NCBI GenBank assembly: GCA_002269645.1
Contig: NIVC01000006.1
Coordinates: 372,001-436,000, forward strand
Source of the DNA: Macrostomum lignano
Lineage: Eukaryota
Length of the DNA stretch: 64,000 bases
Direction: 5' to 3'
Notes under the pieces: generated by a model
Seen by the model: only the letters and a program-made list of their open reading frames with translations
What the model was told of the DNA's origin: nothing
The model's database searches: none
Shown: in pieces, positions 10,401 to 54,434 of the stretch
How positions within the stretch are numbered: the stretch's first letter is position 1
How the letters are laid out: the number at the start of each line of letters is the position of its first letter
Made by a program: the position numbers and the translations under genes

Positions 10401-11138
10401 GGACATCTTTAACAATCCCAAACTAGGGATTACTGGACATCTTTAAGAACCCAAAACTAGGGACTGCCGGACACCCTAAAAACTTCAAATTAAGGAATTA
10501 GCAGAAACCCTAATTAAGAGAATAGAAGACATTATTAAGAATCCAAAATCAAGGGATTAACAGACACCTTTAAGGATAAATTACACGGGGATAAATCCAC
10601 AGACTTTAAATATTTTATTAGGGCCTTACTCAAATCTCACCTTGAGAAAGAAGGCGTGCTCATTAACACCGGGCACGCCAAAGGTATTAGTGAGCGCACC
10701 CACCCCAATAATCAATCGATCATAGCCAATCTGATAGGATGCTCGACTTCCCAAACAGGAACGGCAGGTGACTTCGCGCAGATTAAAGTCCACCTCAGTG
10801 GCCTCGGCCAGATGGAAATGGTCCGACTGTCTGAAGCCATACTCGCGCACCGGCTCAATAATGGAACGAAACTCAAGCGTACCAACAGTTGTTGAGCACA
10901 GCAGCGGGGTGAATAGAAAGTGATTCCTAGGCGACACGACAATGACGTCAAATTTTGATTTGTCAACATTGCGCAGAGCCGAGTAGCTGCCCCAGCCCGT
11001 GCCCAGAATTACAAGACGCTGCCGGCTGCCATTTTGATAATCTGCTGATGCAGAATGGCGGCAGCGGATGCTGCATTTTTGAAGCCTAAAGCTGTTACAA
11101 CAGCGACGGCTTAGAGGAAGGAGCAGCAATGATGCCAA
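7499..11138 (-). CDS. Type II (alternative, rotenone-insensitive) mitochondrial NADH:ubiquinone oxidoreductase, Ndi1/Nde-like; exon 2 interrupted by a MITE; no genomic ATG
   Basis: Exons 11138-10641, 9551-8888 (MITE plus one TSD = 305 bp to be removed) and 8021-7499, all GT-AG, give 1380 nt = 460 codons in frame. Motifs: RLVILGTGWG, SPRNHFLFTPLL, YDRLIIGVGA, VIVGGGPTGVEFGAEL, VVWSTG, FAIGDC, TAQVAERQGRYLA, WLLWRSAYL...DW...LFGRD. Arg/Ser/Leu-rich presequence-like N-terminus. Confidence 0.9.
8520..8860. repeat. Intronic minisatellite, ~31-bp unit with palindromic core GTCACGTGAC
   Basis: About 11 units of AAGACGAATGGTCACGTGACTTTTATGGATT, in the NDH-2 intron 8022-8887. Confidence 0.9.
9142..9438. 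mobile_element. 297-bp MITE with 14-bp TIRs and 8-bp TSD (hAT- or P-superfamily type) inserted in NDH-2 exon 2
   Basis: TIR CATACATGCGCAAC at 9142-9155 and its exact reverse complement at 9425-9438. TSD ACAATGAC at 9134-9141 and 9439-9446. Subterminal GTCGGCC repeats. Confidence 0.93.
9630..10480. repeat. Intronic minisatellite, 34-bp unit AAGAATCCAAAACTAGGGACTACCGGACATTTTC
   Basis: About 25 tandem copies in NDH-2 intron 9552-10640. Confidence 0.95.
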
Positions 11139-22367: not shown

Positions 22368-25300
22368 ATCCCCGCTCTCCAATTTCCCGCAGTCTGGGCC
22401 ATCGCAGCCTGAGCGCGCCCAGTCTGGACCATCGGCATCGCCAGCATTTATTCAATGGCGATGGCGGTGGACTTCAGCCTGATCAGCAGCAGCCACCGAT
22501 GGACGCGGCCACTGGCGACTGCGGCCTGCTGTGCAGCCTCCTGCTGCCCGCCTCGCTAGCCGGCGGCAACACTTCGTGCGGCTCGCCCTGCCAGGCTGCC
22601 GCCAATTCGTCCGCTGCCCCCGCCTCTCTGGGCTCGTCCAGGAGGGTGGAGTTTCTCTATCGGGCCAGGTGCGACGATGCCCAGGCTGTGCTGCGGTTTC
22701 TGTCCAGAGGCGGCGGGCCCGTGGATCTGGTGCAGGTAGGCTGGGCGATGGTTTGGCTCTGTGTAGTGTCTGTCAAGTGTCTGTAGTGTCTGTTAAGTTT
22801 CTTACGTGTCTGTGACTTGTCTGTAGGTTCTCTGCTAATTGTCTGTAGTGTCTGTCAAGTGTCTGTAGTGTCTGTCAATTGTCTGTAGTGTCTTTCAATT
22901 CTCTGTAGTGTCTAAATGTGTCCGTAGTGTCTGCCTGTCATCCCCTGTCAAGTGTCTGTTTTTTCTGTCTTTAGTGTCTCTGCCTTCCTGTTTGTCCGCC
23001 TGTGTCTGTGTGTATGTGTCTGTCTCATTCCCTGTGTTTTTATCTGCTTTTTATCAGGTGTTATTTTTTACCGGGTTCATGCTAGTTCTTTTTTGAATTA
23101 AGCGCTTGTACTTTTGCACTTGGTCACGTGACTTCTGTCCCGTCTGTCGAACTGCAGGGCGGCAGCAGGCGCACCGCTCTGTGCTACGCTGCAGCCAATG
23201 GCAACAGCCGCCTGGCCGAGGAGCTCCTGGCGCTCGGCGCAGCGGTGGACGGCCTCGGCTACGAGGTGCCGCTGATCCACGCCTGCGAGCGCGGCCACCT
23301 GGACACTGTCCGGCTCCTGCTGGCCTCTGGCGCGTCGCCCGCTTGTCGAGACGCTCGCGGCTCGACGCCTCTAATTAAAGCGGTCAGTCAGGGACATCTG
23401 GAGGTTGTCCGGTTGCTATTGGATACGGCTGCGGAGTCAGCCGGTGCCTCTGTAGACGCGGTTAGCACTGAGCCCTGCTTCATCTGTCTGGAAGGTGAGG
23501 ATGCCAGCTTAACGTTGGATTTTTTGTATAGAATTGAAAAGTAAATGAAATGCATCGCCAAAGTGAACAAAGCATTTCAGCCCACCCCATAATTCATCAC
23601 TCCATTCAATAATTATTCCGCCTAATAATCATCATCCTATTCAATAATCATCATCTCACCTGAAAATCAACATCCGACTCAATAATCATCATCTCACCTG
23701 AAAATCATCATCTTCCTTGTTAACCATTATCCTACTCAAAAAATATAATCTTACTTGAAAGTTATCGTCCTACACTCCTACTCAATAATCATCTCATCTG
23801 ATAATCATCATCCAACTCAATAAAAATCATCTTTCTTGATAACTATTATCCTACTGAATAATCATCATCCTACTCAATAATCATCATCTCACCTGAAAAT
23901 CATCATCCTACTCAATAATCATCTCATCTGATAATCATCACCCAACTCAATAAAAATCATCTTTCTTGATAACTATTATCCTACTGAATAATCATCATCT
24001 CACCTGAAAATCATCATCCTACTGAATAATCATCATCTCACCTGAAAATCATCATCTCACCTGAAAATCATCATCCTACTCAATAATCATCTCATCTGAT
24101 AATCATCATCCAACTCAATAAAAATCTTCTTTCTTGATAACTATTATCCTACTGAATAATCATCATCTCACCTGAAAATCATCATCCCACTCAATAATCA
24201 TCATCTCACCTGAAAATCATCATCCTACTGAATAATAATCATCTCACCTGAAAATCATCATCCTACTCAATAATCATCATCTCACCTGAAAATCATCATC
24301 CCACTCAATAATCATCATCTCACCTGAAAATCATCATCCTACTGAATAATCATCATCTCACCTGAAAATCATCATCCCACTCAATAATCATCATCTCACC
24401 TGAAAATCATCATCCTACTGAATAATCATCATCTCACCTGAAAATCATCATCCCACTCAATAATAATCATCTCACCTGAAAATCATCATCCTACTGAATA
24501 ATCATCATCTCACCTGAAAATCATCATCCCACTCAATAATCATCATCTCACCTGAAAATCATCATCCTACTGAATAATCATCATCTCACCTGAAAATCAT
24601 CATCCTACTCAATAATAATCATCTCACCTGAAAATCATCATCCCACTCAATAATCATCATCTCACCTGAAAATCATCATCCTACTGAATAATAATCATCT
24701 CACCTGAAAATCATCATCCTACTCAATAATCATCATCTCACCTGAAAATCATCATCCTACTCAATAATCATCATCTCACCTGAAAATCATCATCCCACTC
24801 AATAATCATCATCTCACCTGAAAATCATCATCCTACTGAATAATAATCATCTCACCTGAAAATCATCATCCTACTCAATAATCATCATCTCACCTGAAAA
24901 TCATCATCCCACTCAATAATCATCATCTCACCTGAAAATCATCATCCTACTGAATAATCATCATCTCACCTGAAAATCATCATCCCACTCAATAATCATC
25001 ATCTCACCTGAAAATCATCATCCTACTGAATAATCATCATCTCACCTGAAAATCATCATCCCACTCAATAATCATCATCTCACCTGAAAATCATCATCCT
25101 ACTGAATAATCATCATCTCACCTGAAAATCATCATCCCACTCAATAATCATCATCTCACCTGAAAATCATCATCCTACTGAATAATCATCATCTCACCTG
25201 AAAATCATCATCCCACTCAATAATCATCATCTCACCTGAAAATCATCATCCTACTGAATAATCATCATCTCACCTGAAAATCATCATCCCACTCAATAAT

Positions 25301-27311
25301 CATCATCTCACCTGAAAATCATCATCCCACTCAATAATCATCATCTCACCTGAAAATCATCATCTCACCTGAAAATCATCATCTCACCTGAAAATCATCA
25401 TCTCACCTGAAAATCATCATCTCAACTGATACTCGTAACCATCATCCCATTACGATGATAAATGATTATTCATATAATCATCGATAGTCATTATCCTACT
25501 CAATAATCTCTTCCCATACCGACATATACCGATAATCACCATCCCACACCCGGCCTCCCAGAGCAATCGGACGGTTCGAGTTTTGCGCCCGACTGCGGCG
25601 GCCTCAGCGCTCTGATGCGCGCCACCCACGCCCTTCGAGTTGACGTCGCCCGCCTGCTGCTGGACTCCGGCGGAGCCAGCGTGGACCTCGCCAACAGCCG
25701 GGGCAACACGGCGCTCCACTCTTTGGCCCTCACCTGTCGGCTACCCGCCGCGCCCGTGTCTCACCTGGTGCATCATCCGCCGCTGCACTGGGCCGCCACA
25801 GGACGACTTCTGCTTAGCCGGGCTTGCCGGGTGAATCCCAGGAATCGTTGCGGAGAGACTCCGCTAGATCGGCTGGTCGCCTGCGCGCCCGCCACGCTGG
25901 AGTTAGCGCCGTTCAAAGTGAGCTTGACAACTGCATAGCAACGGGCTGTTGTTTACCTAAGCTCTGAGTTAATCTAGTAGCTTGACAACTGCATAGCAAC
26001 GGGCTGTTGTTTACCTAAGCTCTGGGTTAATCTAGTAGCTTGACAACTGCATAGCAACGGGCTGTTGTTTACCTAAGCTCTGGGTTAATCTAGTAGCTTG
26101 ACAACTGCATAGCAACGGTTTGATGGCTAATTGTTAACCTAATCTCCGGGGTTAATCTAGTAGCTTGACAACCGCATAGCAACGGTTTGATGGCTAATTG
26201 TTAACCTAATCTCTGGGGTTAATCTAGTAGCTTGACAACCGCATAGCAACGGTTTGATGGCTAATTGTTAACCTAATCTCCGGGGTTAATCTAGTAGCTT
26301 GACAACTGCATAGCAACGGGCTGTCGGAGCTCCAAGTTAATCTAGTAGCTCGACAACCGCATAGCAACGGTTTGTTGTTAACCTAAGCTCCGGGGTTAAT
26401 CTAGTAGCTTGACAACTGCATAGCAACGGTTTGATGGCTAATTGTTAACCTAATCTCCGGGGTTAATCTAGTAGCTTGACAACTGCATAGCAACGGTTTG
26501 ATGGCTAATTGTTAACCTAATCTCCGGGGTTAATCTAGTAGCTTGACAACTGCATAGCAACGGTTTGATGGCTAATTGTTAACCTAATCTCCGGGGTTAA
26601 TCTAGTAGCTTGACAACTGCATAGCAACGGTTTGATGGCTAATTGTTAACCTAAGCTCCGGGGTTAATCTAGTAGCTTGACAACCGCATAGCAACGGGCT
26701 GTCGGAGCTCCAAGTTAATCTAGTAGCTTGACAACCGCATAGCAACGGTTTGATTGCCGTTGTTAACCTAAGCTCCGGGTAAATCTAGTAGCTTGACAAC
26801 GGCATAGCAACCAGCCCTAATTTCTGTTTCCTATTCGCCCCCAACACAGGCTCAAGCGGTAACAGCGTGGTGCGAAGTGGTCCGCCTACTGCTTGTGTAC
26901 GGAGCCGACCTGTCCAACAAGGTGACATTCAATCACAGAGAGACCGCCCTGGACCGCCTAGTGAGAAAGCTGCTTGCCCTGATGGAGTGCAGCGCCAGCT
27001 CGCAGGAGTTCTTGGCTTTGGCCAGGCTGCTGCTCACTCTGTCCCGGTTGAGCACCCGGCGGCGCCGGCTGGCCTCGGCGGCGGCTTACCTGGCGAGCCA
27101 CCAGCTGGCCGCCAGCGAGCCGCGTTTGGGCCGGTTTTTCCTGCGCCTGCGCGACGACCTCTCCGGCCCGCTGAGCTTGAAGGCGGCCTCCGCACTGAGG
27201 CTGCGTCTGGCTTGCGGAGATCCGCTGGTTGCTAGGGCTCGCCGATTGCCGTTGCCAAGGACGCTAATTCACTACGTAGTATTCGGTGTTGCCGAATCTG
27301 CGGCTAGTTAA
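21688..27311 (+). CDS. Ankyrin repeat and SOCS box protein (ASB-like), 5 exons, ~530 aa
   Basis: Exons 21688-21782, 22393-22735, 23158-23494, 25562-25917 and 26850-27311 join with consistent phases (2,0,1,0) to 1593 nt. Ankyrin repeats (TALCYAAANGN, PLIHACERGH, TPLIKAVSQGH, GNTALH, GETPL). C-terminal SOCS box PLSLKAASALRLR...LPLPRTLIHYV. Confidence 0.88.
22213..22367. repeat. (TCTG)n microsatellite in ASB intron 1
   Basis: Direct. Confidence 0.95.
23620..25430. repeat. Intronic minisatellite, ~38-bp unit CTCACCTGAAAATCATCATCCTACT(C/G)AATAATCATCAT
   Basis: About 45 copies filling ASB intron 3. Confidence 0.95.
25920..26812. repeat. Intronic minisatellite, 58-67-bp unit (GCTTGACAACTGCATAGCAACGG...TTAATCTAGTA)
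   Basis: About 14 copies starting immediately after the donor of ASB intron 4. Confidence 0.93.
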
Positions 27312-28729
27312 TTCTCGTACCACCTGGTATCCTGGCTCAACATTCAGGATGTCAGATTGGAAATCGGGAAGCCAACATCTCTATGCCCTGGGCCTTTCCA
27401 CGTTACCTTGACAAGAGTCGCGAAACAGTCATTTCAAACAACTCACTAGTTACTCTAGCGACTCTGGGGGCGACTCAAAGGGCGTCACGTTGAGTCTTGA
27501 GAATTGACTCTTTGATAACTTTTTGGCGTTTCGTCGTTTTAGAGTCGTCTAGGGTCACTTTTTTCCTATTTTTACCTGTGTTATCTGCGCTACGGGTGCG
27601 GGTGCTACACAATTGACTCTGTTAGGCACCTTGGCCTATGTACCGTTTTCATCGGGTAATTGATTGACACAGTGTTGAAATCCCAGGAATCTCTATTATA
27701 CTAATGGAAATATGGAACGTAAATTTGAGAAAGCGCACAACATATCTTAGTTGCTGCAAAGTGCGAATTGTCTACGACCAAAACCCCATGAATTGCCAAG
27801 AAATTTATAGTTTGTGTAGAAAACAAAATTTGTCTATGGTTGGGGCTCCAACACCACACCCAAGGAAGCCTCTATGTTCGCTTCTAGGAACCTAGCCGTG
27901 GACTTTTAAGTCACACTTAGACTGGAACTGGAGTTGAATTAAGGTTTACAATAATGTTATTGATATTTGCTAACACTTTCTTAACCATAGATCTATTAAG
28001 TGAAGCATAAAAAAGTACATGATGTTCTTATTTTAAAGTTCAAAAAACAGTTCGATTTTGGCTAAGTCGATCTTTGCTGTTTATGAATATATAAAAATTG
28101 TCTTATTTGTGTATTGTGGTTCTTAACAATCAATAAAAATTATTAGGTGCTCTGTGCTTCTTAATAAGTCATTCTCTTGTGCATATTACTTTTATTAAAA
28201 ATTTTAAATTCGCGCAAAAATTGTCGTAATGCAAAAATTCCGGGTTTTATGGTTCCCTCTTTAATTCCATTCATTCTTATATTTCATATCTCCTCATTTG
28301 CTATTTTATAATTTTAAAGTGCAAAAAATACCCTCTGAAATTCCACTATTATACCTCAATAATTTTTATTTATCAATAAATTTGTTATAATTAATATTGC
28401 TGGACAAACATTATACCTGGTATGTTATTTATGATCTCTAGAGTTGCCCACTTTTAGTGTAGTCTTTAATTATCGATTTTATTTTTAACAAAAATTATTT
28501 TACGTAATTATGTTACTTTTTATTACTTGTTAACAAAAATCATTTTATTGCATTCGCGGATAAGTGAAAAAGTCTGTCTGCTTGCTGGAACTGCAGCTGC
28601 CTTTGATCCTGGCTTTTTTGATTCGCTAATACAATGCGCCCTACTTTCTTTGTACTATGTAATTTAATATATAATCCTTAGATTCTCTAAAGTACATTTA
28701 CCATTATTTTATACCTGCCATAAAATACA

Positions 28730-29262
28730 TCCACTATCCAATCCTCCCCTGCCCTAAAGTACATTCAATACCCAATCCCCCTGCCATAAAGTACATTCAC
28801 TATCCAATCCTCCCCTGCCCTAAAGTACATTCACTATCCAATCCTCCCCTGCCCTAAAGTACATTCACTATCCAATCCTCCCCTGCCCTAAAGTACATTC
28901 AATACCCAATCCCCCTGCCATAAAGTACATTCACTATCCAATCCTCCCCTGCCCTAAAGTACATTCACTATCCAATCCTCCCCTGCCCTAAAGTACATTC
29001 ACTATCCAATCCTCCCCTGCCCTAAAGTACATTCAATACCCAATCCCCCTGCCATAAAGTACATTCAATACCCAATCCCCCTGCCATAAAGTACATTCAC
29101 TATCCAATCCTCCCCTGCCCTAAAGTACATTCACTATCCAATCCTCCCCTGCCCTAAAGTACATTCACTATCCAATCCTCCCCTGCCCTAAAGTACATTC
29201 ACTATCCGATCCTCCCCTGCCCTAAAGTACATTCACTATCCAATCCTCCCCTGCCCTAAAGT
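28730..29262. repeat. Minisatellite, 34-bp unit AAAGTACATTCACTATCCAATCCTCCCCTGCCCT
   Basis: About 16 tandem copies. Confidence 0.95.
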
Positions 29263-29589
29263 TCAAGTTCATCAATTTTCAAGTATACAGAAATCAATAA
29301 GTTTCGGTTGTGACTAAGCTTACGATTTTTAACCATTGAACGTTTTCAGTGTTAAAACTTTAGTTTGTTTAAAAAAATTACTTTATTCGTTTATATTTAG
29401 CTGCAACTTACTGGGCCCAACAACTATGAGTTTCAAGTAGGCATTTTTGTAACCATTGGTGCTGAGTTCCTTTTAAACTCGAAGCTTAAATGTCTTTGAA
29501 ATTAACTTAAATTTGAGTCAATACATGTGTTAACTCCATCCATAGTTTAGAATTCTCAAACAAGATTGCTGGAATTCCAAGAATCCCAA

Positions 29590-30555
29590 CTATTTAGGGA
29601 TCAGAATCCCAGCAATGTAGGGATCAGAATCCCAGCAATGTAGGGATAGAATCCCAGCAATTTAGGAATCAGAATCCCAGCAATGTAGGGATCAGAATCA
29701 CAGCAATGTAGGGATCAGAATCACAGCAATGTAGGGATCAGAATCACAGCAATGTAGGGATCAGAATCCCAGCAATGTAGGGATCAGAATCCAAGCAATG
29801 TTGGGATCAGAAACCCAGAAATTTAAGGATCAGAATTCCAAGAATTTAGGGATCAGAATCCCAGCAATGTAGGGATCTGTATCCTAGGAATTTAGGGATC
29901 AGAATCCCAACTGTTTAAGGATCAGAATCCCATCTGTTTAAGGATCAGAATCCCAGGAATTTAGGGATCAGAATCCCAGAAATTTAGGGATCAGAATCCC
30001 AGGAATTTAGGGATCAGAATCCCAGAAATTTAGGGATCAGAATCCCAGAAATTTAGGGATCAGAATCCCAGGTATTTAGGGATCAGAATCCCAGAAATTT
30101 AGGGATCAGAATCCCAGGTATTTAGGGATCAGAATCCCAGAAATTTAGGGATCAGAATCCCAGGAATTTAGGGATCAGAATCCCAGAAATTTAGGGATCA
30201 GAATCCCAGGTATTTAGGGATCAGAATCCCAGAAATTTAGGGATCAGAATCCCAGAAATTTAGGGATCAGAATCCCAGGTATTTAGGGATCAGAATCCCA
30301 GGAATTTAGGGATCAGAATCCCAGGAATTTAGGAATCAGAATCCCAGGTATTTAGGGATCAGAATCCCAGGAATTTAGGGATCAGAATCCCAGGTATTTA
30401 GGGATCAGAATCCCAGGAATTTAGAGATCAGAATCCCAGAAATTCAGGGATTAGAATCCCAGGTATTTAGGGATCAGAATCCCAGCAATGTAGGGATCAG
30501 AATCCCAACTGTTTAAGGATCAGAATCCCAGGAATTTAGGGATCAGAATCCCAAG
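29590..30555. repeat. Minisatellite, 23-bp unit AGGGATCAGAATCCCAGGAATTT
   Basis: About 42 tandem copies directly upstream of the COX15 first acceptor. Confidence 0.95.
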
Positions 30556-30660
30556 AACTTAAGGCGAGAAATTCTTCAACCTTAGGGATCGTAATTGTGC
30601 CCTCCAGTTCGGAACGCTTATTTTCACAGCCTTTATTTATTAACCCTCTCCTCAACTCAG

Positions 30661-31986
30661 TTCGCCATTCGCCACCTGTCAGCGCCGGCCCATCTCGGGC
30701 TGAGCACGGTTCGCTGCTGCTCGTTGAACTCCGGCAGCCTGCTGGCCGCCAACGCTCGCCAATCCCAGTTTGGCTCGCTGTTGCGCAATCGATTGCGTAA
30801 TCAGAGTCGATCTCCGCTAGGCGGCAACGCCATCCGCCGGTGCCACTCGTCGGCGCCTCCGTCGGCTTCGCCGGTCTGGCACCCGATGGTGGCGCATCTC
30901 ACCGCTGGCCAGAGACGCGCCGTCGGCATCTGGCTGGCCACCTGCGCCGGGATGACCGCTGGAGCCGTTGTGCTCGGCGGCCTGACCCGGCTCACGAGGT
31001 CCGGCCTGAGCATGACCAACTGGTCGCTGTTTAAGGTGTTTAAGGGTTACTGCGTATGTCTCTAATCTCACTCAGTCTCTGATCTCACCCAGACTCTAAT
31101 CTCACCCAGGCTTATCTCATCCTTACTGTTGTCTCACCATGACTTATCTTACATAAATCTAGTCTCACCTCGACTCGAATCTCACATTTACTCTAATCTT
31201 AACCCAGCTTTAGTTTCACACTGACTTGAATCTCACTCTGTTTCATCTCCCCCACCCCTAGTCTAATCTCAACAATAATCTAATCTAACCTTTCTCTTAC
31301 CTCACTCTGACTCTAATCTTACCCTTAGCTCTAAAATCTCATCGTTGTCGCTAATTGTCCCTTTTGTCCTCAAACTCAATGCGTTTCTAATCTCACAGTG
31401 TGCCCAATCTCATCTTTAGCTCAAAAGTCATCATTACTATTGGCTCTAATCTTATCATGCTCATATTCTCTCTCACGCGCCCAATCCATTATCAATGGAA
31501 TCCAGGAGCTACCGCCAGTGACTCAGGCAGACTGGGAGCGGGAGTTCCAGCGCTACCAGGCCTACCCGGAGTACGAGTACATCGTGCGCGAGCGAGGCAG
31601 CATGTCGCTGAACGATTTCAAAGCCATCTTCTGGCTGGAGTTTCTGCACAGAACCTGGGGTCGGGCGATCGGAGCTGCCTTCCTCCTGCCGGCCGCTTAC
31701 TTCTGGGCTCGGGGCCGCTTTCAGGTGGGCTGTGCCAGCCAAGATAGGGGCTCGGGTCACGTGATCTGACCATTGGATGTAACTGTACAGCCCAAATTAG
31801 GTTAGTTAGTTCGTTAGTTAGTTAAATCACTTAGTAGGTACTTAGATAGATAGTTACGCTCGTAGTTAATTAATCTGTAATTAGTTCGTTAATTAGATGG
31901 ATAGTTAATTAGTTAGTTATTTATTCAGTTAGTTAGTTAGTTAGTTAGTTAGTCAGTTAGTTAGTTAGTCAGTTAGTTAGTTAGTC

Positions 31987-32017
<31 letters not shown>

Positions 32018-32022
32018 CAGTC

Positions 32023-32053
<31 letters not shown>

Positions 32054-33095
32054 CAATTAGTTAATTAGTTAGTTAGTTAGTTAGTCAGTGAGTTAGTTAG
32101 TTAGTTAGTTAGTTAGTCAGTGAGTTAGTTAGTTAGTTAGTCAGTGAGTTAGTCAGTTAGTCAGCTAGTAAGTCAGTCAGTTAGTTGGTTATTTAGTCAG
32201 TCAGTTAGTCAGTTAGTGGGTTAGTCAGTTAGTGAATTGGATAATATTTCGACACTCAAATCGCAGCCAGCATTGAGTCAAGTAGTTTTGTCAATTCTAC
32301 CACTGATCCCTAAGCAACAACATGTCACACCGCAGTGCCACATGCCGTCCCTACCACCCCCCGCCCCCACCTCAGCCCGCCATGCGCAAGCGAGTGCTAA
32401 TCTACGGCAGTCTAATCCTTGGCCAAGGACTGCTAGGCTGGTACATGGTCCGCAGCGGGCTGAGCAAGGACACCCTGACTCAGGACGTGCCCCGGGTCAG
32501 CCAGTACAGACTGGCCGCTCACCTGGGCTCGGCCCTGCTGCTATTCTCCCTGTTCACCTGGTCGGCCCTCACCCACCTGCTGCCGTTCACTCAATTCGGC
32601 GCCGCCGTGGCTCTGCGCGGCCGCCTGGCCGCCGCTGCCCACCTGCTGACGTCGGCCGCCTTCGCCACGGCCATTTCCGGCGCGTTCGTTGCCGGTATCG
32701 ACGCCGGCTTGGTGTACAACAGCTGGCCGAAGATGGCCGACCGCTGGGTGCCAACCGACTATTGGGCTCTGCAGCCGGCTTGGAGGAATCTGTTTGAGAA
32801 CGCCAGCGCTACTCAGTTCAATCACCGACTGCTGGGGCACAGCACCGCCTGTGCGGTTGCCGCCGTTTGGCTGTGGGCTGTGGCGGCCAAAACTCGCAGA
32901 GCCGCTCTGCCGCCTCGAACTAGGCTGGCGCTGAACAGCCTACTGGCAGTAGTGTGCACCCAGGCCGGGCTGGGCATCGCCACTCTGCTCACCTACGTGC
33001 CCATCGCTTTGGCTGCCTGTCACCAGACTGGCAGTCTGGCTTTGCTGGGCACCGCGACTTGGCTCATGCACGAGCTGAGGCGCGTGCCCAAGTGA
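30661..33095 (+). CDS. COX15: Heme A synthase COX15, 3 exons; no genomic ATG
   Basis: Exons 30661-31035, 31506-31724 and 32376-33095, all phase 0 and GT-AG. Motifs [94 protein letters not shown]. Confidence 0.95.
31790..32235. repeat. (TTAG)n microsatellite in COX15 intron 2
   Basis: Direct. Confidence 0.95.
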
Positions 33096-33120: not shown

Positions 33121-33180
<60 letters not shown>

Positions 33181-33207
33181 CAAAGACACAAAGACAGACA
33201 GGCAGGC

Positions 33208-33252
<45 letters not shown>

Positions 33253-33297
33253 CAAAGACAGACAGGCAGACAGACAGACAAACAAACAGACAGACAG
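33120..33297. repeat. (CAGA)n microsatellite just 3' of COX15
   Basis: Direct. Confidence 0.95.
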
Positions 33298-34970: not shown

Positions 34971-36034
34971 CGCTGGTCTTGCTTCAGCTTGTCTAATAAG
35001 CTAAGCTATGTACTTAAGTTCGCTTCGGTGATTGTAAATCAACTTCGCTTCCCAGTTCCCCTCTACGAGTTTAGTCCTAGACTCCTAAGGCCATCACCAT
35101 GCATTTGAGACCTTTTGAGAAATTACGTTTATAATCGTTTATGGTACAAAATCAACGTTCAGATCAGAACATTGTATATGGCCCATACTGATATTGGACA
35201 CATTAGCTTTAGCCCATCAACATTTGCCTTCTATCATCGACAATTTTTATCTCAACGCGTGGGGAAACAGAGAAAGCATATAACTTGTCAGGCATAACGC
35301 TTCAAGCACAATGAAGCAAAGAGGTGCCACTTGCAGAAGAGTGCTGTTGAGAAACTGCAAGGTTTCTTCCAACATTAACAGAGAACGGAGAAAGAGCTGT
35401 TTTAAGGCATTTATTTTTAAAATTATCCAGCTACTACCCACACAACTGAACAGTCAATTGAGGAAGCCCGTTTCCGAAAGATCGTTAAAAGAATAAAGAA
35501 ATGCTATATTTCGGTTTCAATTTTTTTTTGCTTCTCGGTCTCCACATCCGTGTGTTTGAGTCGCGCAAATGCATCTTCAAACGCGAAATTCATAGAAATG
35601 GGGCAGTTTGAGGTGAAAGGTCAACTGTCTTTTCACCAATTATCTGTGTCTGTTATATTCTTATGATTTTAGTTCTTACTAGAAAAGGATATATACTCAA
35701 CAACATTAAAAAGTCGCCACCTTTGGCTTTGAGAGTGCGCAGTAAATTCCAGCTCAGTATTGACTTTTCAGTGACACAAGTTGCGCCACGCAACGCAGAG
35801 TTGGGCTGGGTGCGGAGTAATTGGGAAGAGCGGAGGGAGAAGAGAGGATAGCGTGCATGTACGGTACACATACTATAGTATAAGTTAGTTAGTGCCCAGA
35901 GCTCAGCATTACTTCAGCACCAGTCTTTTTGTAGCAATAGTGGCTCTATTCGTACTCTACTACTTTCTGAATAAGTAGCAAAATAGGCGATTGATTGATT
36001 ATGCAATTAAAACGTCACTTATTCGCTCTTTCAG

Positions 36035-39000
36035 TCTGCCGAAGTTGCTTCGTCCGCCGCAGCGGACCGGCCTCCAATTGAGGTGGCCGTCCTTCTGTCC
36101 GACGAGAAGGAGCGCAAGCTGCGCCTCTTCGAACGGTGCCGTCAGAATCCGCCGTCTGGGGTTCGATTCCACCGACTAGATTTAGACGAACTGCTGCAGT
36201 CGGGCAGTCGCTATAGAGTTGTGCTGCACAAGATTCACTCGGAATTGACCTCGAATAAACCCGAATCGATCGATCGTGTCCGGCGGTTTAAAGCTTGGAT
36301 AGAGGCAAGAGGCTCCGAGTTGGTTCTGTTGGACCCTCTGCGCGGCCTCGAGTCCATGCTGCTGTACCGCTTTGCCCAGTGCCAAGCTATGTCCAGGTGT
36401 GCTGGGGCAAAATAAATTTGCCTATTGTGTTCGATTGATTAATCCGCATTTGGTTAGAATATGTTAAGTAGCCAAATCACATGCATACACATCTGTCCAC
36501 GTACTTAAATGCATTCCCGCCCAAGCAGATGTACATTCGGATATCCTCCCAGTCATATGTACATCTTCGCCCATGCAAATGTAACAGTAAACTGCCACGC
36601 ATATGTGATGTACATTATACGCATATCCGCCCAAGCATACGTACGCGCAAATGTACACACCCGCCCACGCACATGTACACATACCCGCCCACGAACATGT
36701 ACACATACCTGCCCACGCACATGTACACCTGCCCGCCCACGCACATGTACACATACCTGCCCACGCACATGTACACACACCCAGGCACTTGTACCGGTAC
36801 ACCTGCCCGCCAAGGTACATGTACACAGACACACACAGGCACTTGTACCGGTACACCTGCCCGCCCACGCACGTACACAAATCCTTCCACGCCGTGAAAT
36901 TTACAGATGCGTCGCCGCATGCCCCGAGCCGCTGCGCCAGCGGGTGTTCGTGCCCCGCTACGCCCTCGTCCAGAACCCTGGCGACCCCGTCGCCGACTCC
37001 AACGGCGCGCTCCGCTTCCCGCTGCTGTGCAAGCCGCATCTGGCCTCCGGAGCGGAGGCGCACAGTATGTCGCTGGTGTTCAATGCCGGACAGCTGGCCG
37101 ACCTGCGGCCGCCCTTGGTGGCTCAGGAGTTTGTCAATCATGGTGCTAGGATTATCAAGGTAAGCATTGATAATTTCCTTTATTTCGGTCCGATAATCCA
37201 GACTCATTTCCTGATTCTTTACTACCAGATAATCCTCATCTTCACTACCAGATAATCCGCCCCTTCACTACCAAATAATCCACCCCTTCACTACCAAATA
37301 ATCCACCCCTTCACTACCAGATAATCCACCCCTTCACTACCAGATAATCCACACCTTCACTACCAGATAATCTGCCCCTTCACTACCAGATAATCTGCCC
37401 CTTCACTACCAGATAATCTGCCCCTTCACTACCAGATAATCTGCCCCTTCACTGCCAGATAATCCACACCTTCACTACCAGATAATCTGCCCCTTCACTA
37501 CCAGATAATCTGCCCCTTCACTACCAGATAATCTGCCCCTTCACTACCAGATAATCTGCCCCTTCACTACCAGATAATCTGCCCCTTCACTACCAGATAA
37601 TCTGCCCCTTCACTACCAGATAATCTGCCCCTTCACTACCAGATAATCTGCCCCTTCACTACCAGATAATCTGCCCCTTCACTACCAGATAATCTGCCCC
37701 TTCACTACCAGATAATCTGCCCCTTCACTGCCAGATAATCTGCCCCTTCACTATCCGATAATCTGCCCCTTCACTACCAGATAATCTGCCCCTTCACTAC
37801 CAGATAATCCGCCCCTTCACTACCAGATAATCTGCCCCTTCACTACCAGATAATCTGCCCCTTCACTACCAGATAATCTGCCCCTTCACTACCAGATAAT
37901 CTGCCCCTTCACTACCAGATAATCTGCCCCTTCACTGCCAGATAATCCACACCTTCACTACCAGATAATCTGCCCCTTCACTACCAGATAATCTGCCCCT
38001 TCACTACCAGATAATCTGCCCCTTCACTGCCAGATAATCCACACCTTCACTACCAGATAATCCACACCTTCACTACCAGATAATCTTCATCTTCACTACC
38101 AGATAATCCGCCCCTTTACTGCCAAATAATCCGCCCCTTCACTACCAGATAATCCGCCCCTTCACTACCAGATGATCCACACCTTCACTACCAGATAATC
38201 TGCCCCTTCACTATCCGATAATCCGCCCCTTCACTATCCGATAATCCGCCCCTTCACTATCCGATAATCCGCCCCTTCACTATCCGATAATCCGCCCCTT
38301 CACTATCCGATAATCCGCCCCTTCACTATCCGATAATCCGCTCATTCACTACCAGATAATCCGCCCCTTCACTGCCAGATAATCCGTCCCTTCACTGCCA
38401 GATAATCCGCCCCTTCACTGCCAGATAATCTGCCCCTTCACTATCCGATAATCTCCCCTTTCACTACCAGATAATCCGCCCCTTCACTACCAGATAATCT
38501 GCCCCTTCACTACCAGATAATCTGCCCCTTCACTACCAGATAATCTGCCCCTTCACTACCAGATAATCTGCCCCTTCACTACCAGATAATCTGCCCCTTC
38601 ACTGCCAGATAATCCACACCTTCACTACCAGATAATCTGCCCCTTCACTACCAGATAATCTGCCCCTTCACTACCAGATAATCTGCCCCTTCACTGCCAG
38701 ATAATCCACACCTTCACTACCAGATAATCCACACCTTCACTACCAGATAATCTTCACCTTCACTACCAGATAATCTGCCCCTTCACTACCAGATAATCTG
38801 CCCCTTCACTACCAGATAATCTGCCCCTTCACTACCAGATAATCCGCCCCTTCACTACCAGATGATCCACACCTTCACTACCAGATAATCTGCCCCTTCA
38901 CTATCCGATAATCCGCCCCTTCACTATCCGATAATCCGCCCCTTCACTATCCGATAATCCGCCCCTTCACTATCCGATAATCCGCCCCTTCACTATCCGA

Positions 39001-40754
39001 TAATCCGCCCCTTCACTATCCGATAATCCGCTCATTCACTACCAGATAATCCGCCCCTTCACTGCCAGATAATCCGTCCCTTCACTGCCAGATAATCCGC
39101 CCCTTCACTGCCAGATAATCTGCCCCTTCACTATCCGATAATCTCCCCTTTCACTACCAGATAATCCGCCCCTTCACTACCAGATAATCTGCCCCTTCAC
39201 TACCAGATAATCTGCCCTTCACTACCAGATAATCTGCCCCTTCACTACCAGATAATCTGCCCCTTCACTACCAGATAATCTGCCCCTTCACTGCCAGATA
39301 ATCCACACCTTCACTACCAGATAATCTGCCCCTTCACTACCAGATAATCTGCCCCTTCACTACCAGATAATCTGCCCCTTCACTGCCAGATAATCCACAC
39401 CTTCACTACCAGATAATCCACACCTTCACTACCAGATAATCTTCACCTTCACTACCAGATAATCTGCCCCTTCACTACCAGATAATCTGCCCCTTCACTA
39501 CCAGATAATCTGCCCCTTCACTACCAGATAATCCGCCCCTTCACTACCAGATGATCCACACCTTCACTACCAGATAATCTGCCCCTTCACTATCCGATAA
39601 TCCGCCCCTTCACTATCCGATAATCCGCCCCTTCACTATCCGATAATCCGCCCCTTCACTATCCGATAATCCGCCCCTTCACTATCCGATAATCCGCCCC
39701 TTCACTATCCGATAATCCGCTCATTCACTACCAGATAATCCGCCCCTTCACTGCCAGATAATCCGTCCCTTCACTGCCAGATAATCCGCCCCTTCACTGC
39801 CAGATAATCTGCCCCTTCACTATCCGATAATCCGCCCCTTCACTATCCGATAATCCGCCCCTTCACTATCCGATAATCCGCCCCTTCACTATCCGATAAT
39901 CCGCCCCTTCACTACCAGATAATCCGCCCCTTCACTATCCGATAATCCGCCCCTTCACTACCAGATAATCCGCCCCTTCACTACCAGATAATCCGCCCCT
40001 TCACTGGCAGATAATCCGCCCCTTCACTACCAGATAATCTGCCCCTTCACCGCCAGATAATCCGCCCCTTCACTGCCAGATAATCCGCCCCTTCACTGCC
40101 AGATAATCCGCCCCTTCACTGGCAGATAATCCGCCCCTTCACTACCAGATAATCCGCCCCTTCACTGGCAGATAATCCGCCCCTTCACTACCAGATAATC
40201 CGCCCCTTCACTGGCAGATAATCCGCCCCTTCACTACCAGATAATCCGCCCCTTCACCGCCAGATAATCCGCCCCTTCACTGCCAGATAATCCGCCCCTT
40301 CACTGGCAGATAATCCGCCCCTTCACTACCAGATAATCTGCCCCTTCACCGCCCCCTTCAACCGCAGGTGTACGTCCTTGGCAGCCGAATTCACGCCTGC
40401 ATTCGTCCGTCAGTTCGCGATTTCCAGGCCGATTACGCCGGCCCGGCCATCCAGTTCTCCAGCCACGCCGTCTCCAAGGCCGGCTGCCAGTCCGAGCTGT
40501 CCGACGCCGCTGCCTCCGCTCAAAACGGCGATGACGGCGAGATGCTGCTGTCCCGCTACTCCGGCCTGCTGGAGCCGCTGTGCCGTGCGTGCCGCTCTGT
40601 GCTCGGCCTCGACCTGCTCAATTTGGACCTGGTGCCCGACACCCGATCTGGTAGATTAGGCCTGGTAGACATTAACCAGTTTCCCGGATTCGAGTCCATG
40701 CCCAACTATGTTGACGCTCTGGTTGAGTTGATCAAGCTGAAGGTTAATTATTAG
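36035..40754 (+). CDS. ITPK1: Inositol-tetrakisphosphate 1-kinase (ATP-grasp), 3 exons; no genomic ATG
   Basis: Exons 36035-36396, 36907-37159 and 40368-40754 join in frame (1002 nt). Motifs [20 protein letters not shown]...[50 protein letters not shown]. Confidence 0.9.
36480..36880. repeat. Degenerate ~24-bp repeat (CATGTACACATACCTGCCCACGCA) in ITPK1 intron 1
   Basis: Direct. Confidence 0.8.
37215..40355. repeat. Intronic minisatellite, 23-bp unit CCAGATAATCTGCCCCTTCACTA, with ~690-bp higher-order repeat
   Basis: Roughly 135 copies. Diagnostic variants recur at 38341/39031/39721 (CTCATTCACT) and 38171/38862/39550 (GATGATCCACACC). Confidence 0.95.
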
Positions 40755-44505: not shown

Positions 44506-46368
44506 TCAAGCCAGCTCCACTTTCATCTGGTCGCTCTGCTTCGATTGTGACTTCGGCTTTGACGACTTCTTCTGCAGTTTGATCTCCTCTTCGTCGCTGG
44601 ATCCGCCCGGATACTCTTGGCTGCTGTCGTCTTCATCGTCCTCCTCCTCCTTCGGCTGCTCCGCCCGCTGCTCCATGTCGATGCTGATGACGTCATCGTT
44701 TAAAGCGGAGCCGGTGCTCAAAGCGCCGCCGCGCCCGCCGCAACGGCAGCCGACAGGCCGCATCTGCGCTACGGTGTTTGGCATGGCGCGGCCACGTGAC
44801 TCCGGCAGTAGCAGCGCCGCCAGGCCGGCCAAGACGGTGACCGATCCGTACAGCAGGCTGGGCAGGTGCGGGTACACCTGGGACAGGATGCCGCCCAGCT
44901 CCGGGGCCATGAACTGGCCGAGGCCCATCACGCTGAATGCAAAGAACAGCGAGCAGCTGCGCACGGTCGTGGGCAGCACCTCGGAGCCGTAGACGTTCAG
45001 CTCGCTGTAGGCGACGGTGATGCTGAACTTCACCGCGATGGCCACGCAGCTGTGCGCCTGGAACACCACGCTGGGGTCTCTGGGAATGAATGGCATGAGG
45101 ATGAGGCCCAGGCCGCAGAAGCACATGGTGATCACGGTGGTTGGCTTCCTACCAATTCGATTGATCATCTGCCAGGCGATGAGGTAGGCCGGCACCTCCA
45201 ACAGGCCGGAGATGAGCACGTTCAGGTACGGATCCAAGGTGATGAAGTCGCGCTGAAAGCACATGGCGTGATAGACAAATGCGGCGGTGAAAAAGTTGAC
45301 AGTAACCACGGCCAGGGTGATCAAATAATCGGCGTTGAAGATGTTCTCCTTGGGCAGGCACTTGAGGATGCGCCTTGAGGACGCGGAGTCTTCGCCGCTG
45401 TTGACAAATTCGTTGTCGGTCAGTTCGAACTTGTCCAACGCGTTCGGGCAGCCTGAAAATTTGCACACCTGTCGGAGAATTTTCTCCGCCCGACGCGTCT
45501 TGCCCCGGGTGAGCAGCCAGCGAGGCGACTCGGGCAGCACCGGGATGTAGGTGGCGAAGCTCAGGCCCGTGATGACCACCACGGCCATCATCTGGTGTCG
45601 CCAGTTCAGCATGTAGTAGCTAATTGCGGCAGAGCTGCTGTAGGCCACCACCCAGGTCATCCAGAACATGTTGCCGTGCAGGCTGCGGTAGTTTTCCCCG
45701 ACCAGCTCCGTGATGAGTATGAGGCCCATAAGCAGGGCGGGGTCGCCACAGCCCATGAAGAATCTGAGCACCATCTGGGCGGTGAGATCCTTGACGAAGA
45801 CCACAGCCAGGTTGCATGCCAGGTTGAGGTAGCAGAAAGCCACAAGCACTGTCTTGCGGCCGAGCAGATCGCCCAGAGGCCCGACCAGGGTGGACAGGAA
45901 GACGCCGAACTGCAGCACCGTCTGCATTCGGTCGTTGAGATACTGCCTATCGCAGACCATTTCGTACTCGATCAGCATGGTCCACCGGTCCGGGTGGTCG
46001 GGGTTGAACTGCCACGCCTCGCACTTCTCAGTCCCGGTGGCGGCAGCGGAGCTCGAATCGTTCTGAAAGTCATCCTCCAGGTTCAACAGACCGTCAGCGC
46101 CGCGCCAGAACCTCGGCGCTCTGCAGGTGAACTGCTCGATGCTAAAATTCAACGCGAAGCTGTTATTTGCAAGGACGTCAGTCCAGGACAAAGTCTGATT
46201 GTCCACGATCGCTTGGGCGCAGTGGAACGGCACGCTAGCCGTAGCCAAGTTCGTCACGAACATGTCGAATGCGGACTTCATGGACAGCACGGACAGCAGG
46301 ATGGTGATGGTCCAGCGGTAGCCGGGCCCCGACTTGGAGATTTGCTTCAGCAGTTCTTCGTAATTCAT
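44506..46368 (-). CDS. SLC22-like organic cation/anion MFS transporter, paralog 1, intronless, 620 aa
   Basis: Large Cys-containing extracellular loop after TM1 (EYEMVCDR), GDLLGRK, LPESPRWLL, RIGRK, YGSEVLPTTVRS, LLLPESRG; about 12 hydrophobic segments; acidic tail. Confidence 0.92.
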   Translation of the reverse strand: MNYEELLKQISKSGPGYRWTITILLSVLSMKSAFDMFVTNLATASVPFHCAQAIVDNQTLSWTDVLANNSFALNFSIEQFTCRAPRFWRGADGLLNLEDDFQNDSSSAAATGTEKCEAWQFNPDHPDRWTMLIEYEMVCDRQYLNDRMQTVLQFGVFLSTLVGPLGDLLGRKTVLVAFCYLNLACNLAVVFVKDLTAQMVLRFFMGCGDPALLMGLILITELVGENYRSLHGNMFWMTWVVAYSSSAAISYYMLNWRHQMMAVVVITGLSFATYIPVLPESPRWLLTRGKTRRAEKILRQVCKFSGCPNALDKFELTDNEFVNSGEDSASSRRILKCLPKENIFNADYLITLAVVTVNFFTAAFVYHAMCFQRDFITLDPYLNVLISGLLEVPAYLIAWQMINRIGRKPTTVITMCFCGLGLILMPFIPRDPSVVFQAHSCVAIAVKFSITVAYSELNVYGSEVLPTTVRSCSLFFAFSVMGLGQFMAPELGGILSQVYPHLPSLLYGSVTVLAGLAALLLPESRGRAMPNTVAQMRPVGCRCGGRGGALSTGSALNDDVISIDMEQRAEQPKEEEDDEDDSSQEYPGGSSDEEEIKLQKKSSKPKSQSKQSDQMKVELA

Positions 46369-54019: not shown

Positions 54020-54434
54020 AGCTCTGCTCTGGCGCTCGGTTCTTTCCAAAGAGAAACTTACAATAGCAGAGAAGCTCACTGGCAAGCCGTTGTCAAGATT
54101 TCTTTTTGCCGCTCTTAACTTCTTTCGCTCGCCACTTCACTTTATTGCACTTCTCTCTAGGAAGCCCCACGAGCCACACACGCTTGTGCCGCTTCTCTGT
54201 TTGCTCGCTGCAGGGGGGGGGGGTCGGTGGAGGCGCTTGATTGGCTCGCAGCAACAGCTGCATAATCATGCGAGGGGGGGCCGTGGGACGATCCCCAACA
54301 CCTCAGAAAGTGGAGAGGCCAGAAGCGCGGCTGGCGGTGCGAATAAATCGCGCCAAGAGGCGATCAGAAAAACTGAAACAAAGCCGTTTGGCCCGCCTTC
54401 ACTGCTTGGCCAGGGGAGACAGAGTAAGACAGAG

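What the first reader, a model, noticed from the sequence alone, without database searches (positions are those of the whole stretch)
30592..30700. COX15 has no ATG for its targeting peptide: acceptor at 30660 in frame for an SL AUG
Seen: CCTCTCCTCAACTCAG|TTC GCC ATT CGC, with an in-frame TAA at 30592-30594 and no ATG between. The first native Met comes about 75 codons later, after the Arg/Ser-rich presequence-like region. AUG addition gives [19 protein letters not shown]. Inference: SL-donated start codon; trans-splicing would control whether the protein gets its mitochondrial leader.
Basis: partly seen in the sequence, partly recalled or inferred. Interest (0 to 1): 0.7.

Follow-up and report, generated by a model that had tools for sequence, protein, structure and literature searches.

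The report
COX15 start codon supplied by spliced leader
The flatworm Macrostomum lignano's COX15 (heme A synthase) gene has no ATG of its own in front of its mitochondrial-leader-like N-terminus. It most likely gets its start codon from the trans-spliced leader RNA, a mechanism already known in flatworms, so this is an ordinary new example.

Summary
There is an in-frame TAA at 30592-30594, a pyrimidine tract ending in AG at 30659-30660, and an open frame from 30661. The first in-frame ATG is at 30886 (codon 76).

The gene is a clean three-exon COX15 (Pfam E=8e-95). It is identical to a 5'-truncated UniProt model from Macrostomum lignano. That species' 35-nt spliced leader (SL) ends in ATG, and use of the SL AUG as initiator is documented in flatworms (Cheng et al. 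2006).

The 75 ATG-less codons look coding:
- a GC change-point at 30663;
- GC3 of 0.77;
- the best codon-usage frame;
- no Asp/Glu, and rich in Arg/Ser.

They give an N-extension of normal length: 89 residues, against 51-124 in 32 animal COX15 proteins. Starting at Met76 would leave 13. Of eight AGs nearby, only 30660 puts an SL AUG into the COX15 frame. I found no convincing upstream ATG exon.

Two other genes in the window show the same ATG-less pattern: NDH-2 at 11138 (- strand) and ITPK1 at 36035.

Direct proof (SL-junction reads) could not be obtained. The claim that trans-splicing "controls" targeting is unsupported.

Verdict: a probable SL-donated start codon (about 0.7), a new member of a known kind, of modest interest.

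The parts
29580..30561 (+). 23-bp tandem array (about 43 copies of AGAATCCCAGGAATTTAGGGATC) directly upstream. It probably lies in the outron or intergenic spacer.
   Evidence: TRF: period 23, 42.7 copies, 89% matches; sequence.
30592..30594 (+). In-frame TAA that closes the COX15 frame upstream.
30630..30660 (+). Pyrimidine-rich tract (CCTTTATTTATTAACCCTCTCCTCAACTCAG) ending in the proposed trans-splice acceptor AG at 30659-30660. A TTAAC branch-point-like motif lies about 17 nt upstream, with no AG between.
   Evidence: for the sequence; pyrimidine fraction of 0.75 at -22..-3, equalled only by the AG at 30682 (inside the coding region) among the 8 AGs in 30562-30720, and the only AG whose SL-AUG ORF runs into COX15.
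30661..30885 (+). 75 ATG-less codons encoding a presequence-like N-extension ([20 protein letters not shown]...SPVWHP).
   Evidence: GC 0.67, GC3 0.77, 0 Asp/Glu, 9 Arg, 13 Ser; frames 1 and 2 contain stops; codon log-odds of +1.8 bits in frame 0 against -36 and -25; change-point at 30663.
30886..30888 (+). First native in-frame ATG (codon 76), only 13 residues before the invariant Gly of the first transmembrane helix.
30661..31035 (+). COX15 exon 1 (125 codons, phase-0 donor AAG|GTGTTT).
31506..31724 (+). COX15 exon 2.
   Evidence: The joined model is in frame and matches P0001 and Pfam PF02628.
32376..33095 (+). COX15 exon 3 with the TGA stop.

Best explanation
This is the 5' end of the Macrostomum lignano gene for COX15 (heme A synthase), a mitochondrial inner-membrane protein. 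The gene carries no start codon for its N-terminal, presequence-like extension.

Proposed mechanism: the pre-mRNA is SL trans-spliced at the AG at 30659-30660. It comes either from its own promoter or as the downstream gene of a polycistron with the ankyrin-repeat gene that ends at 27311. The 35-nt M. lignano spliced leader ends in ...UUGCAUG. Its terminal AUG therefore lands directly in front of UUC (30661) and opens a 438-codon [13 protein letters not shown]...RRVPK.

Shown here: the sequence features, the gene model, the organism, the coding character of the 75 codons, and the lack of alternatives in cis.

Taken from the literature: the SL sequence, and the fact that flatworm SL AUGs initiate translation.

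Inferred: that this acceptor is the one used, that the SL AUG is the initiator here, and that the extension is a mitochondrial targeting sequence.
For: - Gene and organism. The three-exon model hits Pfam COX15-CtaA at E=8.2e-95. The best homolog, P0001, is UniProt 'COX15, Macrostomum lignano'. Its first 240 residues equal model residues 28-267 exactly, and it has no Met start of its own.
- SL. The M. lignano SL is CGGTCTCTTACTGCGAAGACTCAATTTATTGCATG, and 30-39% of genes are trans-spliced, mostly conserved ones (PMC8629364; PMC5730564). Wiberg et al. note that the terminal ATG is likely a start codon (PMC10468722). [quoted passage not shown]
- The region from 30661 is coding. GC change-point at 30663; GC3 of 0.77 against 0.79-0.86 in the other exons and 0.38-0.45 in the intron and upstream sequence; codon log-odds best in frame 0, reached by 2 of 5000 shuffles; 0 Asp/Glu and 9 Arg in 75 residues.
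- An N-extension is needed. 32 animal COX15 proteins have 51-124 residues (median 83.5) before the invariant Gly. The SL-Met form has 89; the Met76 form would have 13.
- Acceptor. Only the AG at 30660, of 8 AGs in 30562-30720, gives an SL-AUG ORF that runs into COX15.
- No cis alternative. In 27312-30660 there are 15 combinations of an ATG reaching a phase-0 GT. None has a GTRAG donor, and all have low GC3.
- Parallels in the same window. NDH-2 (exon start 11138, - strand, after CTGCTTTCAG|) has no ATG in 170 codons, and its Rossmann domain starts at residue 41. ITPK1 (exon start 36035, after CTCTTTCAG|) has an in-frame TAA 27 nt upstream and its first ATG at codon 108.
Against: - There is no direct evidence of trans-splicing at 30660. 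No M. lignano transcript or read could be retrieved, and no paper or supplement mentions this gene.
- The hexamer before the site (ACTCAG) matches only the CAG core of the published trans-acceptor motif [T/C]TNCAG. An upstream AG at 30607 (CCCTCCAG) matches it fully, but would give a 12-codon out-of-frame SL-AUG ORF.
- The amphipathic-helix signal of the extreme N-terminus is weak: maximum hydrophobic moment 0.41, against 0.45-0.77 in homolog N-termini. It rises to 0.58 further in.
- Codon-usage support per codon is much weaker than in the mature exons (0.02 against about 0.4 bits).
- A tiny upstream exon ending in ATG cannot be excluded from sequence alone. Examples are ATG|GT at 27836 and 28249.
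Confidence: 0.7

Rival explanations
1. An unrecognised upstream cis-spliced exon supplies the ATG (possibly only ATG plus a few codons) and joins the same acceptor at 30660.
For: The acceptor is an ordinary (Y)nCAG site that could serve cis-splicing. Flatworm acceptors are often shared between cis- and trans-splicing (PMC12582326). Candidate ATG|GT sites exist at 27836-27838 and 28249-28251, and short ATG...GT segments lie in 27383-28651.
Against: None of the 15 candidates has the GT[A/G]AG donor typical of M. lignano, and all have low GC3 (no more than 0.62, apart from the two bare ATG codons) in AT-rich sequence. They lie in what looks like the 3' UTR of the ankyrin gene, around the AATAAA sites at 28132 and 28375. 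About 1.5 kb of tandem repeats separates them from the acceptor. The N-extension already has a typical length without extra residues. Two other genes in the window show the same ATG-less start.
Confidence: 0.12
2. Translation starts at the native Met76 (30886). The 225 nt upstream are 5' UTR, and this COX15 has no cleavable presequence.
For: It is the first genomic in-frame ATG. Some inner-membrane proteins import without presequences (general knowledge).
Against: It would leave 13 residues before the invariant Gly, against a minimum of 51 in 32 animal homologs. The upstream 75 codons are open only in this frame and have exon-like GC3, frame-specific codon usage and no acidic residues. If the mRNA is trans-spliced at 30660, the SL AUG lies upstream and in frame, so a scanning ribosome would meet it first.
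Confidence: 0.06
3. Trans-splicing uses a different nearby AG (30607 or 30629), or the mRNA is not trans-spliced and initiation is at a near-cognate codon. In-frame candidates are TTG 30595, ATT 30667 and CTG 30676.
For: 30607 (CCCTCCAG) is a full match to the published [T/C]TNCAG trans-acceptor motif. 30629 (TTTTCACAG) is also a reasonable acceptor. Near-cognate codons exist in frame.
Against: SL AUG at 30607 gives a 12-codon ORF. At 30629 it gives a 57-codon out-of-frame ORF. Neither makes COX15. The strongest pyrimidine tract and the composition boundary sit at 30660. Near-cognate initiation is inefficient and unnecessary in an organism whose SL carries an AUG.
Confidence: 0.08
4. Assembly error or pseudogene: a native ATG was lost by a sequencing error or by mutation in a decaying duplicate of this polyploid genome.
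For: M. lignano is a hidden polyploid with many duplicated genes (PMC10468722). The older UniProt model P0001 carries a frameshift.
Against: The whole 437-codon frame is intact with canonical splice sites and a full-length Pfam match. The independent P0001 sequence also lacks a Met start and is identical over its first 240 residues. The same pattern recurs in two unrelated genes.
Confidence: 0.03

Closest known systems
Flatworm SL 3'-terminal AUG used as the translation initiator (Cheng, Cohen, Ndegwa & Davis 2006, J Biol Chem 281:733; Schistosoma mansoni. Also reported for Echinococcus granulosus, PMC3510090.)
   Same: The SL ends in AUG. The acceptor places it in frame with an ORF that lacks its own usable AUG. 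The SL AUG is needed to give an N-terminus matching conserved orthologs.
   Different: The species is different (the free-living macrostomid M. lignano). Within the library searched, the SL ATG there was only noted as a likely start codon (PMC10468722), not analysed gene by gene. No junction read or translation assay is available here for this gene.
slORFs: ORFs created by SL addition (slORFfinder, PMC9851317)
   Same: This is an ORF whose start codon is contributed by the spliced leader.
   Different: slORFfinder mostly describes new or alternative ORFs and near-cognate starts in nematodes, Oikopleura and trypanosomes. Here the SL AUG would start the canonical, conserved protein.
Animal COX15 / heme A synthase with an N-terminal mitochondrial presequence
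   Same: Full-length COX15-CtaA domain, with an acid-free, Arg/Ser-rich N-extension of 89 residues within the 51-124 range of homologs.
   Different: In the 32 homologs compared, the extension begins with a genomically encoded Met. Here the Met is not in the gene.

Membership tests
SL-AUG-initiated flatworm mRNAs (Cheng et al. 2006) | The organism has an SL RNA whose leader ends in AUG. | tested here: met
   The window is M. lignano: P0001 residues 1-240 are identical to the model. The published SL is ...TTGCATG (PMC8629364). No SL RNA gene lies in this window, so the SL sequence rests on the literature.
SL-AUG-initiated flatworm mRNAs (Cheng et al. 2006) | The mRNA is SL trans-spliced at the acceptor in question. 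| not testable with these tools
   No M. lignano reads or transcripts were reachable. The literature and supplements do not mention this gene.
SL-AUG-initiated flatworm mRNAs (Cheng et al. 2006) | The SL AUG falls in frame with the main ORF. | tested here: met
   AG at 30660 followed by TTC. The ORF runs through all three exons to the TGA at 33095.
SL-AUG-initiated flatworm mRNAs (Cheng et al. 2006) | No native AUG can give an N-terminus matching the orthologs. | tested here: met
   In-frame TAA at 30592 and first ATG at codon 76. A start at Met76 leaves 13 residues, against at least 51 in 32 homologs.
SL-AUG-initiated flatworm mRNAs (Cheng et al. 2006) | The SL AUG is actually used by ribosomes. 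| not testable with these tools
   This needs ribosome profiling, N-terminal proteomics or reporter assays.
COX15 / CtaA heme A synthase | Full-length match to the family profile. | tested here: met
   PF02628 at E=8.2e-95, profile positions 2-321 of 322. The first-exon invariant residues are shared with 32 homologs.
Mitochondrial matrix-targeting presequence | N-terminal stretch free of acidic residues and rich in Arg, Ser, Ala and Leu. | tested here: met
   0 Asp/Glu, 9 Arg, 13 Ser, 10 Leu and 9 Ala in 75 residues. Homolog extensions have 0-3 Asp/Glu and 9-17 Arg+Lys.
Mitochondrial matrix-targeting presequence | Amphipathic helix, or a positive call from a dedicated targeting predictor. | tested here: inconclusive
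   Maximum hydrophobic moment is 0.41 in the first 45 residues and 0.58 at residues 56-66, against 0.45-0.77 in homologs. TargetP and MitoFates were not available.

The most novel reading that the evidence does not exclude
Start-codon-less nuclear genes may be common in M. lignano. Three genes with recognisable 5' ends in this 64-kb window fit the pattern, and two of them encode mitochondrial proteins whose whole targeting leader depends on the SL AUG. SL trans-splicing would then be an obligatory translational licence for a sizeable part of the proteome. For COX15, competition among the three closely spaced AGs could tune how much import-competent heme A synthase is made: 30607 gives a 12-codon uORF, 30629 an out-of-frame ORF, and 30660 the productive ORF.
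Probability: 0.12. Interest if true: 0.5.

Novelty: new member of a known kind. Interest (0 to 1): 0.27.

Why it matters
If confirmed, this is a clear example in a free-living model flatworm where a conserved mitochondrial enzyme cannot be translated with its import leader unless the spliced leader donates the AUG.

The practical consequence concerns annotation. Pipelines that trim the SL together with its ATG, or that demand a genomic ATG, will produce 5'-truncated or 'partial' models. The UniProt M. lignano COX15 entry, for instance, starts at Leu28 without a Met. Such models lose targeting peptides, which distorts predictions of subcellular localisation.

It does not change what is known about the mechanism, which has been established in flatworms since 2006.

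Tried and rejected
- Protein-database searches for M. lignano or other Macrostomum COX15 transcripts that might carry an SL-derived N-terminus. The full-length query found only the truncated UniProt model. The exon-1 query returned nothing. The exon-1+2 query returned only distant homologs.
- Exact-product look-ups. Contiguous window ORFs and P0001 were not on record.
- An exact-DNA scan of JGI metagenome contigs for the first 31 nt of exon 1 gave 0 hits.
- Literature. No paper mentions Macrostomum together with COX15. No supplement lists the gene. Cheng 2006 and Wasik 2015 are not held, so their content is cited second-hand.
- Rfam and tRNA scans of the window, and a search for the SL itself, found nothing.
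- The hydrophobic-moment test of the presequence was not discriminating.
- Pfam on the first ITPK1 exon alone and on the ankyrin gene's last exon gave no hit. Identity was settled through PDB and other exons.
- Rejected: a gene on the opposite strand. Only one open reverse frame exists in GC-rich sequence, with no other support.
- Rejected: an ATG inside the tandem array. The ATG at 30488 is followed directly by TAG.

Full report
**Observation.**
On the + strand the sequence reads ...TTATTTATTAACCCTCTCCTCAACTCAG|TTCGCCATTCGCCAC..., with the AG at 30659-30660. The frame that continues into the gene is closed upstream by TAA at 30592-30594. It contains no ATG until 30886-30888, which is codon 76 counted from TTC at 30661. 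The only other ATG near by (30488) is out of frame, sits in the tandem array and is followed at once by TAG.

**What the gene is.**
Three exons join in frame into 437 codons plus TGA, with GT..AG introns:
- exon 1: 30661-31035;
- exon 2: 31506-31724;
- exon 3: 32376-33095.

The product matches Pfam COX15-CtaA over the whole profile (E=8.2e-95) and thousands of COX15/heme A synthase proteins. The top hit, P0001, is the UniProt entry 'Cytochrome c oxidase assembly protein COX15, Macrostomum lignano'. Its first 240 residues equal residues 28-267 of my model exactly, and 120 of 122 C-terminal residues agree. The middle differs by a frameshift in the older model. So the window is M. lignano DNA. 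P0001 itself starts at Leu28 without a Met, which means earlier annotators did not find a start codon either.

**Background from papers.**
- M. lignano has a single 35-nt spliced leader, CGGTCTCTTACTGCGAAGACTCAATTTATTGCATG. It is attached to 30-39% of genes, preferentially conserved ones.
- The top motif at trans-acceptors is [T/C]TNCAG, found at 44% of sites.
- Operon spacers are often inflated by repeats, so a repeat-adjusted distance under 1 kb is used to call operons (PMC8629364; PMC5730564).
- Wiberg et al. remark that the final ATG of the Macrostomum SL is probably a translation start codon (PMC10468722).
- All reported flatworm SLs end in AUG (PMC12582326).
- Cheng et al. 2006 showed that this AUG can act as the initiator methionine. 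It is in frame in 28% of trans-spliced S. mansoni mRNAs and required by more than 40 cDNAs (as summarised in PMC9851317).
- In Echinococcus, several cDNAs need it to match conserved N-termini (PMC3510090).

I could not read Cheng 2006 or Wasik 2015 directly.

**Are the 75 ATG-less codons coding?**
- GC jumps from 0.43 to 0.67, with the maximum-likelihood change-point at 30663. Near-equal alternatives span 30644-30671.
- GC by codon position is 0.60/0.63/0.77. That resembles the other exons (GC3 0.79-0.86) and differs from the intron and the upstream sequence (GC3 0.38-0.45).
- I trained codon-usage log-odds on 1371 codons from this window. The score is +1.8 bits in frame 0, against -36 and -25 in the other forward frames. 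Only 2 of 5000 shuffles reach it. Per codon this is much weaker than in the mature exons, as expected for a poorly constrained leader.
- The peptide has no Asp or Glu, and has 9 Arg, 13 Ser, 10 Leu and 9 Ala. Shuffles give an open, acid-free frame in 1.1% of trials.

**Is the extension needed?**
In an alignment with 32 animal COX15 proteins, all of which start with Met, 51-124 residues (median 83.5) precede the invariant Gly of the first helix. Those stretches contain 0-3 acidic and 9-17 basic residues. The SL-Met form of this protein has 89 residues, 0 acidic and 11 basic. A protein starting at Met76 would have 13. The first transmembrane-like segment starts at residue 88. A simple hydrophobic-moment test was not discriminating, so the targeting function is inferred from composition and position only.

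**Which acceptor?**
There are eight AGs between the end of the tandem array and 30720.
- Only 30660 gives an SL-AUG ORF that runs into COX15.
- 30585 is in frame but meets the TAA after three codons.
- 30607 (CCCTCCAG) is a full match to [T/C]TNCAG but gives a 12-codon ORF.
- 30629 gives a 57-codon out-of-frame ORF.

The AG at 30660 follows the most pyrimidine-rich tract (0.75). That value is equalled only by 30682, which lies inside the coding region. A TTAAC branch-like motif sits about 17 nt upstream, with no AG between. The hexamer ACTCAG, however, matches only the CAG core of the published motif. Sequence alone therefore favours 30660 but does not prove it.

**Is there an upstream ATG exon?**
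The ankyrin-repeat gene upstream (Pfam Ank) has its stop at 27309-27311. Between there and 30660 are 32 ATGs and 15 cases of an ATG reaching a phase-0 GT. None has a GT[A/G]AG donor. Apart from two bare ATG|GT sites, all have GC3 of 0.62 or less in AT-rich sequence. They lie around the likely poly(A) signals of the ankyrin gene at 28132, 28194 and 28375. They are separated from COX15 by two tandem arrays totalling 1.53 kb. A minimal ATG|GT exon (27836, 28249) cannot be excluded.

If the ankyrin gene ends near 28150-28400, the repeat-adjusted spacer to 30660 is about 0.7-1.0 kb. That falls within the published operon criterion, so COX15 may be a downstream operon gene, which would itself require trans-splicing. 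This last point is inference.

**Parallels in the same window.**
- Type II NADH dehydrogenase, - strand. Pfam identity: Pyr_redox_2 from profile position 2 at residue 41, and NDH2_C in a later exon. The first coding exon starts at 11138, right after CTGCTTTCAG|, a full motif match. An in-frame TAA lies at 11183-11181. There is no ATG anywhere in its 170 codons. An SL AUG would give MLASLLLLPLSRRCCNSFRLQK..., a typical leader.
- ITPK1, + strand. Identity: Ins134_P3_kin in later exons, and first-exon residues 18-109 aligned to human ITPK1 residues 12-105 (E=7e-4). The exon starts at 36035 after CTCTTTCAG|. An in-frame TAA lies at 36008, and the first ATG is at codon 108.

Three unrelated genes with conserved N-termini, each beginning exactly at a (Y)nCAG acceptor with an in-frame stop just upstream and no ATG, are most simply explained by one shared external source of AUG. 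Three MFS-type transporter genes in the window do have native ATGs.

**What could not be done.**
No transcript or read evidence was reachable.
- The protein collection holds no other Macrostomum COX15.
- A metagenome DNA scan found nothing.
- Papers and supplements do not mention the gene.

**Conclusion.**
The best explanation, at about 0.7, is that SL trans-splicing at 30660 donates the initiator AUG, producing [10 protein letters not shown]... with a presequence-like leader of normal length.

The rivals are:
- a tiny upstream cis exon (about 0.12);
- another AG or near-cognate initiation (about 0.08);
- a start at Met76 (about 0.06);
- an assembly error or pseudogene (about 0.03).

The idea that trans-splicing regulates whether the leader is present has no support. 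The pattern looks constitutive and genome-wide. Because SL-AUG initiation has been an established flatworm mechanism since 2006, and the ATG-terminal SL of Macrostomum is published, this is a new member of a known kind. Its main value is for annotation, since 5'-partial models lose their targeting peptides.

Noticed in passing
window 10629-11183, - strand: Type II NADH dehydrogenase (NDH-2) gene. Its first coding exon starts at 11138, right after CTGCTTTCAG|. It has an in-frame TAA at 11183-11181 and no ATG in all 170 codons. An SL AUG would give MLASLLLLPLSRRCC..., an MTS-like leader. This is a second mitochondrial protein in the window that seems to depend on the SL AUG, and a stronger case than COX15, because the Rossmann domain starts at residue 41.
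   Followed up: partly
window 36008-36400 (+); later exons around 36900-37200 and 40368-40754: ITPK1 (inositol-tetrakisphosphate 1-kinase) gene. Its N-terminal exon starts at 36035 after CTCTTTCAG|. An in-frame TAA lies at 36008, and the first in-frame ATG is only at codon 108. This is a third ATG-less 5' end, giving M-SAEVASS... with an SL AUG.
   Followed up: partly
window 11138, 30661 and 36035: In all three ATG-less genes the first exon base after CAG is T (TTG, TTC, TCT), so the SL AUG would be followed by U at +4. The sample is far too small to call this a preference.
   Followed up: no
window 22499-27311 (+) and 27312-30660: An ankyrin-repeat gene lies upstream on the same strand. By eye its C-terminus looks SOCS-box-like, but Pfam gave no hit on that last exon. 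Its stop is at 27309-27311, and poly(A) signals lie at 28132, 28194 and 28375. After subtracting 1.53 kb of tandem repeats, the spacer to the COX15 acceptor is about 0.7-1.0 kb. That is compatible with the published repeat-adjusted operon criterion for M. lignano.
   Followed up: partly
window 29580-30561: A 23-bp tandem array (about 43 copies) directly upstream of the COX15 acceptor. Every unit carries ATCCCAG, so the putative outron holds dozens of acceptor-like CAGs. Whether they act as decoy or alternative SL acceptors is unknown.
   Followed up: no
window 31036-31505, 31725-32375 and 33121-33297: COX15 introns and 3' flank are packed with simple repeats: CTCTAATCTCAC-like units in intron 1, 108 copies of GTTA in intron 2, and 44 copies of GACA just after the stop codon. 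Similar microsatellite-like arrays with strong GC skew fill 36.6-42.9 kb inside the ITPK1 gene.
   Followed up: no
window 44506-46368 (-), 52292-54085 (-) and 60120-61885 (+): Three paralogous MFS/sugar-transporter-like genes share the N-terminus ...YEELLKQISKSGPGYRW... and have native ATG starts. This is a local tandem gene family, and the third copy appears split or frameshifted around 61240-61300.
   Followed up: no
P0001 (UniProt M. lignano COX15) against window 32376-33095: The public UniProt model is 5'-truncated (it starts at Leu28, with no Met). It also carries a roughly 43-residue frameshifted stretch that corresponds to the +1 frame of exon 3, so the public protein entry for this gene is faulty.
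   Followed up: partly
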